Of a DNA stretch of 9,209 nt, positions 958 to 8,032 are shown piece by piece. The notes under the pieces are model-generated. The model was given only the letters and a program-made list of their open reading frames with translations. It searched no databases and had not been told where the DNA came from. Both the position numbers and the translations under genes were made by a program. Origin of the DNA: Octopus sinensis. Taxonomy: Eukaryota. The DNA is taken from contig NW_021827986.1 in the NCBI RefSeq assembly GCF_006345805.1, positions 1 through 9,209 on the forward strand. The letters are read 5' to 3'. The stretch's first letter is position 1; the number at the start of each line of letters is the position of its first letter.

Positions 958-1335
958 ATAATATTTTATTCTCCGATTTGCAGCGACAGTTTTTAAATAC
1001 AAATAAATGACTGAAAAATGATGAAATAACCCCAGCCAGAACCGAACCCACAAATCAACGCTAATATGGCTCCTTGCGGATTCGATTGGGCCAAATGTTC
1101 ACCCATCAATTTAGTTAATATATACTTAAGCTGTCTAACACTGCATATAACACTTGTAGACAAACGCGAAATTTGGCTGAAATTGATGGGCGAACGTTTC
1201 GCGCCATCGGATGCACAAGGAGTCATGTTAGCGTTGATTTGTGGGTTCGATTCTGGCTGGGGTTAGCTCATTATTTTTCAATCATTTGTCTGTATTTAAA
1301 AAATTATGGCTTCAAATCGGAGAATAAAATATTAT
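958..1335. mobile_element. Fold-back / MITE-like element 1 (378 bp, about 155-bp inverted arms)
   Basis: 958-1112 is the reverse complement of 1180-1335, with about 22 differences in 156 positions by hand. The outer 23 bp (ATAATATTTTATTCTCCGATTTG) match perfectly. The spacer is 67 bp and the flanks are TA-rich. Confidence 0.85.
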
Positions 1336-1360: not shown

Positions 1361-1699
1361 CGGAGACCCCCTTCGGTCACGACACAGACCATGGGATTGC
1401 ACCTAGAAAGTTACCCTTCTAGACACAAGTCCGGGCGAGGTTGCTTATGGAAGACCAGCAGTCGCCCATGCATACCAGCCTCTCCTCTCTACCCCACCAG
1501 TGTTATCCAAGGGAAAGACAAAGGTCGATACAGCTTGGCACCAGTGACGTCGCAACTCATTTCTACAGCTGAGTGAACTGGAGCAACGTGAAATAAAGTG
1601 CCTTGCTCAAGAACACAACACGCAGCCCGGTCCGGGATTCGAGCTCACAACCTTACGATCGTAAGCTTGACGCTCTAACCACTGAGCCATGCGCCTTCA
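1361..1699 (-). mobile_element. Full-length tRNA-derived SINE (339 bp) inserted in (TA)n
   Basis: Minus strand begins TGAAGGCGCA. A-box TGGCTCAGTGG (plus 1679-1689), B-box-like GAGCTCGAATCC (plus 1635-1646), then the central motif CTTGAGCAAGGCACTTTATTTCACGTTGCTCC typical of SINE conserved domains. (TA)n lies on both sides. Confidence 0.9.
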
Positions 1700-2724: not shown

Positions 2725-2750
2725 TATATAATATATAATATATATATATA
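2672..2750. repeat. (TA)n microsatellite
   Basis: Directly visible. Confidence 0.95.
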
Positions 2751-2970
2751 TGTAAATATAATATCTGACAATTATTCGATAGCCATGATAAAACTCCGAG
2801 TTTCGGATGTCGGTGCGGAAGCCCACGCCGGCATCTCTTCAGTTATCGGGGTTTTTTTTTCTTTCGATGGCCCGATAACTGAAGAGATGCCGACGTGGGC
2901 TTCCGCCCCGACATCCGGAAGTCGGAGTTTTATCATGGCTACCGAATAATTGTCACATATCATATTTACA
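2751..2970. mobile_element. Fold-back / MITE-like element 2 (220 bp, 100-bp inverted arms, 20-bp loop)
   Basis: 2751-2850 versus the reverse complement of 2871-2970 gives 7 mismatches and no gaps by hand. Ends are TGTAAATAT...ATATTTACA. Confidence 0.9.
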
Positions 2971-3039
2971 GATAAATTCTCTATTTACATAATATCGAGG
3001 GTCTCTTTCATTCATTTGTTATCTTGCCATTTCTATCAA

Positions 3040-3878: not shown

Positions 3879-4285
3879 TTACGGGGTGCGTGCGCTAAGC
3901 GGTGATGTGTGTAAATGCAATGTTATAATCGGTTCCGAAATACCAGTGGCGCGTTCGAACTTGTAAACAAACCATTCATTGTGCTTTGTCAAATGGTGAC
4001 ATTTTTCGCTGTAGACAAATGGTGTCAATACACCTATATCACTTGCAGCGGTTTCTGTAACTGAAGAGGAGATAACTACTCCTAAATGCTTGCATCTCAC
4101 AGTCTGGATAGGTGGCGCTGCGAGCTGGTTTAGGTGCGTTTAGACCATTTGTCTACAGCAAGAAATTTTCTTCATGAGAAAACACAGTGGATTGTTTATG
4201 AGTTCGAACCTGCCACTGACATATTCGAACTGGTAATAACTTTGCATTTACACACACACCACTGCTCAGCGCTCCCGTCCAGTAA
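3879..4285. mobile_element. Fold-back / MITE-like element 3 (old, about 170-bp inverted arms, 65-bp spacer)
   Basis: 3879-4050 is an inverted copy of 4116-4285, roughly 70-75% identical by eye. An identical 16-bp block GCTGTAGACAAATGGT lies at 4008-4023 with its reverse complement at 4144-4159. Confidence 0.75.
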
Positions 4286-4387
4286 TTTGTTTGCGGCGAA
4301 TCGCCGATTAGCACTACCAACAGACTTTCATTGATAGGAATAACATAAGAGAGATTTTCTCTTTTACCAGCTCGGAGCTCCACCCTC

Positions 4388-4586
4388 CGGTTTCTGTGAC
4401 TGAAGAGGAGATAACCACTCCCAAATGCATGCATCTTCACAGTCTGGATAGGTGGTGCTGCGACTTGATTTAAGTGTATTTACACCATTTGTCTACAGCA
4501 AGAAATTTTCTCCGTGACAAACACAGTGAATGACTTGTTTACGAGTTCGAACGTGCCATTGGTATATTCGAACTCGTAATAACATT
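4388..4586. repeat. Direct partial copy (spacer plus most of the right arm) of fold-back element 3
   Basis: 4388-4586 aligns with 4049-4243 (CGGTTTCTGT.ACTGAAGAGGAGATAAC...CACAGTCTGGATAGGTGG...ACCATTTGTCTACAGCAAGAAATTTTCT...). Confidence 0.85.
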
Positions 4587-4775
4587 ACTTTTAATTATTC
4601 TCTACCACCAGAATCTGATTTTTAAGTGAGTGTGTAAACAATGGCCAGAGGCAAGAATTGGCTAAAAACTTTTAAAATATATTCCTTTCAAACATGATGA
4701 TGATGATAATTTAATAATGATTTCATTTATTTGCTCCAGTGTCACTTTGATGGCACTCGCTGCTCTCTCACTCAC

Positions 4776-6062: not shown

Positions 6063-6512
6063 CAGTCATCCCGTAATACTTTAACACAAAACCTTTTCAC
6101 ACAGCAACATCACATATACCACACAGTCACTTCTCTACTGCAATACATATTTCGCACACCACATCACTTATTCTACATAAGCACAGCCCTGTACTATAAC
6201 ACAAATTTTACACACTACATCATGTATCCTACGCAAAATCATCTCTGAATACTAACGTGCATATTTCACACACCACTTCAAACATACTACAAAATCATCT
6301 CCCGATACTATAATGCATATTTTACACAGCATATCACATATTCTTCACAATCACTTCTCAATACAAAAACTCAAATTTCACAGCCTTATTCTACATAATG
6401 ACCTGTCAATACAATAACACATATTTCTCAATACCATAACGCATATTTCACAAACGATATTACATATTCATCATAATCACCTCTCGCTAATACAACACAA
6501 ATTTAATACACT
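6063..6512 (+). repeat. Degenerate 56-bp minisatellite, left part
   Basis: Unit resembles CAATCACTTCTCAATACTATAACGCATATTTCACACAGCATATCACATATTCCAC. Unit anchors at 6124, (6180), 6236, 6292 and 6348 are 56 bp apart. There are irregular units at 6063, 6396 and 6474. Confidence 0.8.
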
Positions 6513-6513
6513 G

Positions 6514-6584
6514 TCCTCGGTAGTATAGTGGTAAGTATCCCCGCTGTCACGCGGGAGACCGGGGTTCGATTCCCCGCCGGGGAG
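6514..6584 (+). tRNA. tRNA-Asp-GTC: tRNA-Asp(GTC) copy, 71 nt, lacking one C in the anticodon loop (probable retroposed pseudogene or sequencing indel)
   Basis: Nearly identical to the canonical metazoan tRNA-Asp. Acceptor stem TCCTCGG/CCGGGGA plus discriminator G, A-box TAGTATAGTGG (6521-6531), anticodon stem CCCGC/GCGGG, anticodon GTC (6546-6548), B-box GGTTCGATTCC (6563-6573). The loop is TGTCAC (6 nt) rather than CTGTCAC. Confidence 0.9.
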
Positions 6585-6592
6585 GCTTATTG

Positions 6593-6596
6593 TTTT
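6593..6596 (+). terminator. Minimal Pol III terminator (T4) after tRNA-Asp
   Basis: TTTT starts 9 nt after the discriminator. Four T is the minimal, leak-prone length. Confidence 0.5.
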
Positions 6597-6599
6597 ATA

Positions 6600-6746
6600 G
6601 GCGTAGGAATGGCTGTGTGGTAAGTAACTTGCTTACCAACCACATGGTTCCGGGTTCCGTCCCACTGCGTGGCACCTTGCGCAAGTCTCTTCTACTAAGC
6701 CTTGTGAGTGTATTTGGTAGACGGAAAGTGAAAGAAGCCCGTCGTA

Positions 6747-6812
<66 letters not shown>

Positions 6813-7031
6813 CGTTTCTGTGTCTGTCTTTGTCCTCCCAGCATCGCTTGACAACCGATGCTGGTGTATTTACGTCCCCGTAATTTAGCGGTTCGGCAAA
6901 AGATACCGATAGAATAAGTACTAGGCTTACAAAGAATATGTCCTGGGGTCGATTTGCTCGACTAAAAGGCGGTGCTCCAGCATAGCCACAGTCAAATGAC
7001 TGAAACAAGTAAAATAGTAGAGAGTAGAGAG
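6600..7031 (+). mobile_element. tRNA-derived SINE with an internal (TA)n(TG)n microsatellite and an AGAGT-type tail
   Basis: A-box TGGCTGTGTGG (6610-6620), degenerate B-box GGTTCCGTCC (6653-6662), microsatellite at about 6746-6812, a 3' half with CGATAGAATAAGTAC...CTGGGGTCGATTTGCTCGACT, and a tail TAGTAGAGAGTAGAGAG. It matches an abundant Octopus SINE as I recall it. Confidence 0.9.
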
Positions 7032-7037
7032 TACACT

Positions 7038-7162
7038 ACATCACGTATTATACACAGTCACTTCCCAATAGTATAACACATATTTCACACTCCATATCAT
7101 ATATTCCACGCAATCACTTTTCAATACTATAACGCATATTTCTCACACCATATGAAATATTC
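7038..7162 (+). repeat. Degenerate 56-bp minisatellite, right part
   Basis: Anchors CAGTCAC at 7055 and CAATCAC at 7111 are 56 bp apart and show the same unit as 6063-6512. Confidence 0.8.
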
Positions 7163-7604: not shown

Positions 7605-7886
7605 AAAACAGTAGCTGAAAATGCACTGAGAATAGTTAGAATATTTTTATTAATATATTATATTCAAGGCTTTAACCGATTTATATATATATACTGTTGT
7701 GTGTGGGGAGATTCATTCTCTTTTAGTGCCTTATAATTTAACACACACACCGGTAGAATTTCCACTCATTTCATTATTTATTTTTCTAAACAACTATGAA
7801 CAACTAATTGAAAAGTTTGCAAGACGCAACGAAAATTTTTGGAGAATAAAGAAGGAAATGAGTGGAATTTTACCAGTGAGTGTGTT

Positions 7887-7894
7887 GATATAAT

Positions 7895-7975
<81 letters not shown>

Positions 7976-7988
7976 CATATATATATAT

Positions 7989-8032
<44 letters not shown>
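7887..8032. repeat. (TA)n microsatellite
   Basis: Directly visible. Confidence 0.95.

What the first reader, a model, noticed from the sequence alone, without database searches (positions are those of the whole stretch)
6507..7037. tRNA-Asp and a SINE inserted as one composite unit: candidate new dimeric SINE or tRNA-SINE chimera
Seen: TACACT lies at 6507-6512, just before G+tRNA-Asp, and again at 7032-7037, just after the SINE tail. The host 56-bp minisatellite unit that starts at 6474 has 39 nt before the insert and 17 nt after the second TACACT, up to the next anchor at 7055. 39+17=56, so removing 6513-7037 restores exact phase. The tRNA is therefore unlikely to be a resident gene that later gained a SINE neighbour here; both arrived in one event. 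The tRNA keeps a 3' trailer ending in TTTT and has intact A/B boxes, while the SINE's own B-box is degenerate (GGTTCCGTCC). Known: LINE machinery makes small-RNA chimeras by template switching (U6-L1 type), and dimeric SINEs arise by Pol III read-through. Inference: this is either a one-off pre-tRNA/SINE template-switch chimera, or a copy of an active composite family in which tRNA-Asp supplies the promoter to a SINE with a weak one.
Basis: partly seen in the sequence, partly recalled or inferred. Interest (0 to 1): 0.82.

Follow-up and report, generated by a model that had tools for sequence, protein, structure and literature searches.

The report
Pre-tRNA-Asp fused to octopus SINE
A copy of an unprocessed aspartate tRNA and an ordinary octopus SINE sit head to tail inside one 6-bp target-site duplication, so they most likely entered this minisatellite together as one chimeric reverse-transcribed insert; the mechanism is known, though it is seldom seen this cleanly.

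Summary
TACACT flanks a 519-nt insert (6513-7031). Removing 525 nt, the insert plus one TACACT, rebuilds a gapless 56-nt minisatellite unit. The insert is G, then a tRNA-Asp(GTC) copy (6514-6584, no CCA), a 12-nt trailer ending in TTTT, ATA, and a SINE that starts at its normal 5' end (6600) and ends in an (AGTAGAG)n tail.

Two corrections. The tRNA has a 6-nt anticodon loop because C32 is missing, so it is not an intact tRNA. The 'degenerate B box' cannot be shown to be a family trait.

The SINE is an Octopus family, because pieces of it occur in O. bimaculoides protein models. Three other copies seen through translated contigs have unrelated sequence in front of the head.

Best reading (about 0.55): one target-primed reverse transcription event in which the LINE reverse transcriptase finished the SINE RNA and jumped to the oligo-U end of a pre-tRNA-Asp.

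Main rival (about 0.28): a retrocopy of a read-through transcript, or a member of a composite family.

The genome-wide junction count could not be run, because no octopus DNA was reachable with these tools. This is a new member of a known kind and of moderate interest.

The parts
6093..7160 (+). Host 56-bp A/C-rich minisatellite (about 10 units), interrupted by the insert
   Evidence: TRF reports period 56. Anchors are listed, the unit alignment, and repeat families D8 and D11.
6507..6512 (+). 5' copy of the target-site duplication, TACACT
   Evidence: It is part of the rebuilt 56-nt unit.
6513..6513 (+). Single extra G before tRNA position 1. It is either a 1-nt leader or a non-templated base.
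   Evidence: Read directly from the sequence. Its origin is inferred.
6514..6584 (+). tRNA-Asp(GTC) copy of 71 nt. Boxes A and B are canonical, C32 is deleted (6-nt anticodon loop), and there is no CCA.
   Evidence: ARAGORN. Rfam RF00005 at 48.7 bits with a gap at position 32. Fold.
6585..6596 (+). 3' trailer GCTTATTGTTTT, ending in the only T4 run inside the composite (a Pol III terminator)
   Evidence: T runs at 6593 and 7118 only.
6597..6599 (+). ATA junction filler between the trailer and the SINE head
   Evidence: The SINE 5' end at about 6600 is supported by the divergence point of P0020, P0023 and P0024.
6600..6744 (+). SINE head and 5' body, with box A-like TGGCTGTGTGG (6610) and box B-like GGTTCCGTCC (6653)
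   Evidence: SINE-derived peptides occur in the O. bimaculoides protein P0001 and in P0020-P0024. It is not recognised as a tRNA by Rfam even at E<=10.
6745..6809 (+). Microsatellite (TA)n(TG)n inside the SINE
   Evidence: TRF.
6810..7015 (+). SINE 3' body
   Evidence: Matches the P0001 segments TDRISTRLIKNKSWGRFARLK and LVEKINPRTYS.
7016..7031 (+). SINE tail, (AGTAGAG)n. The repeat register runs 2 nt (TA) into the TSD, which gives a microhomology for priming.
   Evidence: TRF reports 7016-7033, period 7, 100% matches.
7032..7037 (+). 3' copy of the target-site duplication, TACACT

Best explanation
A single target-primed reverse transcription event placed a chimeric cDNA into one unit of a 56-bp minisatellite and duplicated 6 bp (TACACT).

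Proposed sequence of events:
1. A LINE endonuclease/reverse transcriptase nicked the bottom strand at TA/TT. It primed on the (AGUAGAG)n tail of an Octopus SINE RNA, using 2 nt of microhomology.
2. It copied the SINE RNA to its normal 5' end.
3. About three bases were added at the join (ATA on the + strand).
4. The enzyme jumped to the 3' oligo-U end of a nuclear pre-tRNA-Asp that still carried its 12-nt trailer and had no CCA. It copied that RNA to its 5' end.

What is shown: the insert limits, the TSD, the restored phase, the identity and limits of the modules, and their shared orientation.

What is inferred: that the join was made by a template jump at the RNA/cDNA level rather than copied from a pre-existing genomic arrangement; which LINE did it; and whether the missing C32 is a reverse-transcription error or a later mutation.

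The product is a dead tRNA pseudogene joined to a SINE copy. It keeps Pol III boxes but has no demonstrated activity.
For: One TSD encloses both modules, and excising 525 nt restores a gapless 56-nt unit.

No correctly placed direct repeat exists for either module alone.

The tRNA module has the limits of a Pol III primary transcript. It starts within 1 nt of mature position 1, has no CCA, and ends exactly at the only TTTT run in the composite.

The SINE begins at the same point where three other copies (P0020, P0023, P0024) diverge into unrelated flanks. It is therefore a complete stand-alone element that normally has no tRNA-Asp in front.

Both modules point the same way and are only 3 nt apart.

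The tail repeat overlaps the TSD by 2 nt, as expected for annealing-assisted priming.

From the literature: the published hallmarks of template-switch chimeras are a full-length small cellular RNA at the 5' side, a LINE-dependent element at the 3' side, the same orientation, direct fusion and flanking short direct repeats (PMC2104539). LINE reverse transcriptases prefer small RNAs as jump acceptors (PMC4758252, citing Buzdin 2003). Octopus has many recently active SINE and LINE families (PMC13282606).
Against: Only this one locus could be examined, so a pre-existing genomic tRNA-SINE arrangement that was read through and retrocopied cannot be excluded.

Three filler bases at the join are not typical of the mammalian U6/L1 chimeras. 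In one mammalian U6atac/Alu case, an extra base at the junction was read as a hint of two separate events (PMC4476161).

The 3' module is not 5'-truncated, unlike most described chimeras.

The TSD is short (6 bp) and on its own has about a 6% chance expectation.

The typical TSD length for this SINE family is unknown.
Confidence: 0.55

Rival explanations
1. This is a retrocopy of a Pol III read-through transcript, or a member of a young composite (dimeric) SINE family. Somewhere in the genome a tRNA-Asp gene has this SINE 3 nt past its terminator. Pol III starts from the tRNA boxes, leaks through TTTT, and the SINE tail recruits the LINE machinery. The window holds one daughter copy.
For: The tRNA A and B boxes are canonical, while the SINE B-like box in this copy departs from GGTTCGANNCC. 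A T4 run is a minimal terminator that can leak (general Pol III knowledge). There is a single TSD and a restored phase. Complex SINEs make up 13% of SINE families, and the Twin SINE of Culex is thought to derive from a dimeric tRNA precursor (PMC3531059). O. vulgaris has about 900 recently active, mostly unclassified SINE families (PMC13282606).
Against: The module boundary falls exactly at the terminator. Termination predicts that position; read-through of an arbitrary genomic neighbour does not. The leader is 1 nt at most, shorter than usual Pol III leaders. Three of three other SINE heads visible in translated contigs have unrelated 5' flanks. No predicted protein in the searched collections reads through the junction, although this is a weak negative. 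There is no copy-number evidence at all.
Confidence: 0.28
2. There were two independent insertions. A pre-tRNA-Asp retrocopy entered first and made the TACACT duplication. A SINE then landed exactly at the 3' edge of that retrocopy with little or no TSD (at most TA). The reverse order is also possible.
For: SINEs make up about 11.6% of an octopus genome (PMC13282606), so nested and adjacent insertions are common. A 2-nt TA repeat could be read at 6598-6599 and 7032-7033. The filler ATA is unexplained.
Against: This needs a rare solo pre-tRNA retrocopy plus a second hit within about 2 nt of its boundary, and it also needs the second event to leave essentially no TSD. No direct repeat of 5 nt or more is correctly placed for either module alone. 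The shared orientation and the precise terminator boundary would then be coincidences.
Confidence: 0.1
3. The fusion was made at the RNA level before reverse transcription, by ligation or trans-joining of pre-tRNA-Asp to SINE RNA. The fused RNA was then retrotransposed in the ordinary way.
For: It gives the same end product as a template jump. From my own recollection, RNA ligation has been proposed for U6/L1 chimeras; I did not check this in a paper here.
Against: A pre-tRNA ending in UUUU-3'OH and a 5'-triphosphate Pol III SINE transcript are not the end chemistry used by the known RNA ligase pathway. The ATA filler is better explained by non-templated addition by a reverse transcriptase.
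Confidence: 0.05
4. The tRNA-Asp is a resident gene that later gained a SINE neighbour, and TACACT recurs by chance as part of the repeat unit.
For: The unit consensus has CACACC at the same offset, so TACACT-like words are native to the array. The 6-mer alone has about a 6% chance expectation.
Against: The 3' TACACT is not preceded by the unit's ATTT anchor; the SINE tail precedes it. With the tRNA left in place the unit would carry about 90 foreign bases. Only removal of both modules plus one TACACT gives a 56-nt gapless unit.
Confidence: 0.02

Closest known systems
Bipartite chimeric retrogenes made by LINE template switching (U6/L1, U3/L1 and 5S/L1 in mammals; WEIRD-MGL 'MINE' and WEIRD-Mg-SINE in Magnaporthe)
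   Same: A full-length small Pol III RNA sits at the 5' side and a LINE-dependent element with its own tail at the 3' side. Both have the same orientation, are joined almost directly, and are flanked together by one short direct repeat (criteria listed in PMC2104539).
   Different: The 3' partner is a complete SINE rather than a 5'-truncated LINE. The 5' partner is a trailer-bearing pre-tRNA. There are 3 filler bases at the join. The TSD is 6 bp rather than 10-20 bp. The host is a cephalopod and the LINE partner is unidentified and not L1-like (the tail is a simple repeat, not poly-A).
tRNA/LINE-1 chimeric insertions in mammals (bioRxiv 10.1101/2025.02.02.635956)
   Same: tRNA sequence and a retroelement are inserted in one event within one TSD.
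   Different: The mammalian cases are mostly half tRNAs in antisense orientation and are attributed to twin priming. Here the tRNA is full length, in sense orientation, and carries a 3' trailer.
snRNA/Alu chimeras (U6atac/Alu; PMC4476161)
   Same: A small RNA is fused upstream of a SINE, the closest structural analogue. They are reported as very rare.
   Different: The small RNA and the SINE are different. The credible mammalian case has a 14-bp TSD and no filler.
Complex (dimeric) tRNA-derived SINEs, e.g. Twin SINE of Culex and B1-dID (SINEBase, PMC3531059)
   Same: Two Pol III promoter-bearing modules lie in tandem. The proposed origin is a dimeric precursor or a template switch.
   Different: Those are families with at least 100 copies, shared diagnostic changes and no internal terminator. 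Here there is one observed copy, a near-native tRNA, and a TTTT between the modules.

Membership tests
Template-switch chimeric retrogene | The whole composite is flanked by one target-site duplication, and the empty site can be reconstructed | tested here: met
   TACACT lies at 6507 and 7032. Excising 525 nt restores a gapless 56-nt unit.
Template-switch chimeric retrogene | The 5' part is a full-length copy of a cellular (small) RNA | tested here: met
   The tRNA-Asp matches the full Rfam tRNA model (positions 1-71 of 71) and is followed by a 12-nt trailer ending in TTTT, without CCA.
Template-switch chimeric retrogene | The 3' part is a LINE or LINE-dependent element ending in its own tail, in the same orientation, fused directly | tested here: met
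   The SINE spans 6600-7031 on the + strand with an (AGTAGAG)n tail. The two modules are 3 nt (ATA) apart.
Template-switch chimeric retrogene | The 3' part is 5'-truncated at a random point (common in described sets, but not universal) | tested here: not met
   The SINE starts where P0020, P0023 and P0024 leave the SINE, so it is full length. For a template of about 430 nt, running to the end before jumping is expected. I treat this as a difference, not a disqualifier.
Template-switch chimeric retrogene | The junction is unique, not shared by other loci (a one-off event) | not testable with these tools
   The collections hold no octopus DNA: the SINE control pattern gives 0 hits. Gene ranges in the octopod assemblies were too long to return DNA.
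Complex/dimeric SINE family (SINEBase definition, PMC3531059) | At least 100 interspersed copies with the same module set | not testable with these tools
   No genome access. Junction patterns gave 0 hits in collections that also lack the SINE itself.
Complex/dimeric SINE family (SINEBase definition, PMC3531059) | An internal Pol III promoter in the head | tested here: met
   Box A is TAGTATAGTGG (6521) and box B is GGTTCGATTCC (6563).
Complex/dimeric SINE family (SINEBase definition, PMC3531059) | The unit can be transcribed as a whole, with no Pol III terminator between the modules | tested here: not met
   TTTT at 6593-6596 lies exactly between the modules and is the only T4 run in the composite. 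How much it leaks is unknown.
Complex/dimeric SINE family (SINEBase definition, PMC3531059) | Diagnostic substitutions shared among copies but absent from the cellular tRNA | not testable with these tools
   There is only one copy.
Functional resident tRNA-Asp gene | A standard cloverleaf with a 7-nt anticodon loop | tested here: not met
   The loop is 6 nt. ARAGORN reports 'tRNA-???' with anticodon gtca, and Rfam places a gap at position 32.
Functional resident tRNA-Asp gene | Native to the locus, that is, outside any insertion | tested here: not met
   It lies inside the TSD and is foreign to the minisatellite phase.
Octopus SINE (3' module) | Repeated in octopus genomes | tested here: met
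   Three separate SINE-derived pieces occur in O. bimaculoides A0A0L8FSD0. Further copies are seen in P0020-P0024.
Octopus SINE (3' module) | A tRNA-derived head | tested here: inconclusive
   A- and B-like boxes are present 33 nt apart. There is no Rfam tRNA match at E<=10 and no significant similarity to the adjacent tRNA-Asp (z about 1.6).

The most novel reading that the evidence does not exclude
The locus is a daughter copy of a very young composite SINE in octopus. In that family a near-native tRNA-Asp gene has been captured as a new Pol III head in front of an older SINE, and leaky termination at T4 allows whole-unit transcription. That would be the birth of a dimeric SINE family caught before the head has diverged from the cellular tRNA.
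Probability: 0.22. Interest if true: 0.6.

Novelty: new member of a known kind. Interest (0 to 1): 0.36.

Why it matters
SINE heads are thought to be acquired and exchanged by reverse-transcriptase template jumps onto small Pol III RNAs. Clean, datable examples of the raw product are scarce outside mammals and one fungus: a native small RNA fused to a complete SINE, with the empty site reconstructible. The minisatellite phase makes the empty site here unusually certain.

If it is a one-off, it documents that octopus LINE machinery makes such jumps. It also suggests that trailer-bearing pre-tRNAs are available as acceptors.

If further copies exist, it would be an example of how a complex SINE is born. 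Either way it is a tidy illustration, not a new principle.

Tried and rejected
1. Genome-wide junction search. The pattern GGTTCGATTCCCCGNCGGGGAG-N5-30-GGCGNAGGANTGGCTGTGTGG gave 0 hits in viral, metagenome and bacterial/archaeal genome collections. The SINE-only control GCTTACCAACCACATGGTTCCGGGTTC also gave 0 hits. These negatives are therefore uninformative.

2. Protein route to other copies. The junction-spanning open frame (77 aa) gave no hit. A six-frame concatenated query gave only O. bimaculoides A0A0L8FSD0.

3. Fetching octopus DNA. Exact-product look-ups for four window ORFs and for P0001, P0003 and P0005 found nothing. P0002 (O. bimaculoides) and P0004 (Argonauta hians) are on record, but their genes span 113 kb and 299 kb, so no DNA was returned.

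4. Literature search for SINE sequence strings: 0 papers. The Albertin 2015 and Buzdin 2003 papers are not held.

5. Pfam scan on ten stop-free stretches of the window: no real domain, so the window is non-coding.

6. Rejected ideas. The SINE head as a second tRNA-Asp: similarity is not above shuffles. TTATA at 6595 and 7048 as a SINE-only TSD: it is 16 nt off the tail. The sub-threshold Rfam miRNA and snoRNA hits across the window are microsatellite or hairpin artefacts.

Full report
**What is in the sequence.** The window is AT-rich, non-coding and full of microsatellites and small repeats. From about 6093 to 7160 it carries a 56-bp A/C-rich minisatellite. Inside one unit lies a 519-nt insert. 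Its parts, in order, are:
- G at 6513.
- A tRNA at 6514-6584.
- GCTTATTGTTTT at 6585-6596.
- ATA at 6597-6599.
- A SINE at 6600-7031, with an internal (TA)n(TG)n microsatellite (6745-6809) and an (AGTAGAG)n tail (7016-7031).

TACACT lies immediately before the insert (6507-6512) and immediately after it (7032-7037).

**Check of the observation.**
- TACACT occurs only three times on the + strand of the window.
- The unit anchors lie at 6149, 6205, 6263, 6319, 6375, 6445 and 6501, and resume at 7082 and 7138. The gap 7082-6501 is 581 nt, which is 525+56.
- The repeat finder independently reports a 581-nt spacing between in-register copies at 6465 and 7046 (family D11).
- After removing 525 nt, the interrupted unit is exactly 56 nt and aligns without gaps to its neighbours.
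- The paralogous unit at 6205 reads ATTTTACACACTACATCATGTAT, against the rebuilt ATTTAATACACTACATCACGTAT. The array therefore expects one TACACT, and the second is a true duplication.
- A scan of all excisions around the insert peaks at 525 nt. The eight best solutions all remove 525 nt, and seven of them are the TSD-equivalent positions.
- A well-placed 6-mer alone would arise in about 6% of flank shuffles when the boundaries are given generous slack. It is the combination with the phase that makes the case.
- No direct repeat of 5 nt or more is correctly placed for the SINE alone or for the tRNA alone.

**The tRNA module.**
- Rfam scores it 48.7 bits as a tRNA over the full model.
- That loss leaves a 6-nt anticodon loop. 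This is why ARAGORN reports 'tRNA-???' with anticodon gtca. The copy is therefore not an intact tRNA.
- Box A (TAGTATAGTGG) and box B (GGTTCGATTCC) are canonical.
- There is no CCA. The 12-nt trailer ends in TTTT, which is the only run of four or more T in the whole composite; the next one is at 7118.
- The module therefore has the limits of a Pol III primary transcript, or of a 5'-processed precursor that still bears its 3' trailer. It does not look like a mature tRNA or an arbitrary piece of genomic DNA.

**The SINE module.**
- A six-frame protein query recovered Octopus bimaculoides A0A0L8FSD0, which contains three separate SINE-derived stretches. The element is therefore an Octopus SINE and the window comes from an octopus-like genome.
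- A profile-free search with the antisense frame of the SINE head found four more predicted proteins with SINE-derived stretches. Three of them come from short Logan contigs.
- In the alignment, P0020, P0023 and P0024 follow the head to ...TTQP(L/F)LR and then diverge into three unrelated sequences. None reads the antisense tRNA-Asp peptide.
- This places the normal SINE 5' end at about 6600. It also shows that ordinary copies stand alone, though the sample is only three.
- The window copy, like P0020, lacks six codons (about 18 nt, between 6696 and 6697) that are present in P0001, P0021 and P0023.
- The head has A-like (TGGCTGTGTGG, 6610) and B-like (GGTTCCGTCC, 6653) boxes.
- It is not recognised as a tRNA by Rfam even at E<=10. 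It is not significantly similar to the adjacent tRNA-Asp.
- Whether the B-like box is weaker than the family norm could not be tested, because the change is silent in the only frame available for comparison.

**How it most likely arose.** One TSD around two co-oriented modules, with no TSD for either module alone, points to one target-primed reverse transcription event. The tail repeat runs 2 nt into the TSD, which fits annealing-assisted priming.

Two observations favour a template jump:
- The tRNA module ends exactly at its terminator.
- The SINE starts at its own 5' end.

Both are what a jump from the 5' end of the SINE RNA to the oligo-U 3' end of a pre-tRNA-Asp would produce. ATA would then be non-templated filler, or a short 5' extension of the SINE transcript.

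This matches the published hallmarks of chimeric retrogenes (PMC2104539). It also matches the known preference of LINE reverse transcriptases for small RNAs as acceptors (PMC4758252).

It differs from the described sets in four ways:
- The 3' module is a complete SINE.
- There are three filler bases at the join.
- The TSD is short.
- The 5' module is a full-length sense pre-tRNA. Mammalian tRNA/L1 chimeras are mostly antisense halves (bioRxiv 10.1101/2025.02.02.635956), and snRNA/Alu chimeras are very rare (PMC4476161).

**Rivals.**
- Read-through transcript or young composite family. A read-through transcript from a genomic tRNA-Asp gene with this SINE just past its terminator would give the same structure, and so would membership of a young composite family. 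The terminator-exact boundary, the leader of at most 1 nt and the TTTT between the modules argue against this but do not exclude it.
- Two independent insertions. This needs a rare solo pre-tRNA retrocopy, a second hit within about 2 nt of its edge, and almost no TSD for the second event.
- Resident tRNA gene. This is excluded by the phase analysis.

**What could not be done.** None of the DNA collections available here contains octopus sequence; the SINE control pattern found nothing. The junction searches are therefore uninformative. Octopod assemblies are indexed, but the only genes I could reach span 113 kb and 299 kb, so no DNA was returned. The decisive count of junction copies, the donor tRNA-Asp gene and the orthologous empty site remain to be checked.

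**Verdict.** The single-event reading is well supported. A one-off template-switch chimera is the best explanation (about 0.55), and the composite-family reading remains possible (about 0.2-0.3). It is a new member of a known kind and of moderate interest.

Noticed in passing
window 1361-1690 (- strand): A second SINE of a different family. Its head reads GAAGGCGCATGGCTCAGTGGTTAGAGCG on the minus strand and scores only 11.8 bits as a tRNA in Rfam. It sits in (TA)n on both sides, so its TSD cannot be read.
   Followed up: partly
window 990-1302 (extending to about 960-1330): A long foldback with 123-nt arms that are 86% complementary and 67 nt apart; it looks like a MITE. It produces sub-threshold Rfam hits to plant MIR8565 and MIR2619 on both strands, which are hairpin artefacts.
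   Followed up: partly
window 2744-2977: A near-perfect palindrome with 107-nt arms that are 92% complementary and a 20-nt loop, flanked by (TA)n. It is probably another foldback or MITE.
   Followed up: no
window 3880-4600: A repeat of about 340 bp is present as two direct copies (4049-4250 and 4388-4593, 85-92% identical). By eye, an inverted partial copy seems to lie upstream (about 3880-4040). The element is unclassified and has no Pfam domain.
   Followed up: partly
window 6696/6697: This SINE copy lacks about 18 nt (six codons, SARGYS in the antisense frame) that are present in the copies embedded in P0001, P0021 and P0023 but also absent from P0020. This may be a subfamily indel rather than a private deletion.
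   Followed up: partly
window 6745-6809: A (TA)17(TG)15 compound microsatellite lies inside the SINE body. The SINE-derived peptides in other proteins come from both sides of it but never cross it, so I could not show whether it belongs to the family consensus.
   Followed up: no
P0001 (A0A0L8FSD0_OCTBM) versus P0002: The UniProt O. bimaculoides SASH1-like model carries three SINE-derived stretches and long low-complexity runs. The RefSeq isoform P0002 aligns to only 76% of it. I did not check whether P0002 lacks those stretches, so whether they are annotation artefacts or exonised SINEs is open.
   Followed up: no
window 7741-7885: A hairpin-forming stretch gives sub-threshold Rfam MIR5380 hits on both strands, next to a long (AT)n at 7888-8032. 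It is probably another small foldback repeat.
   Followed up: no
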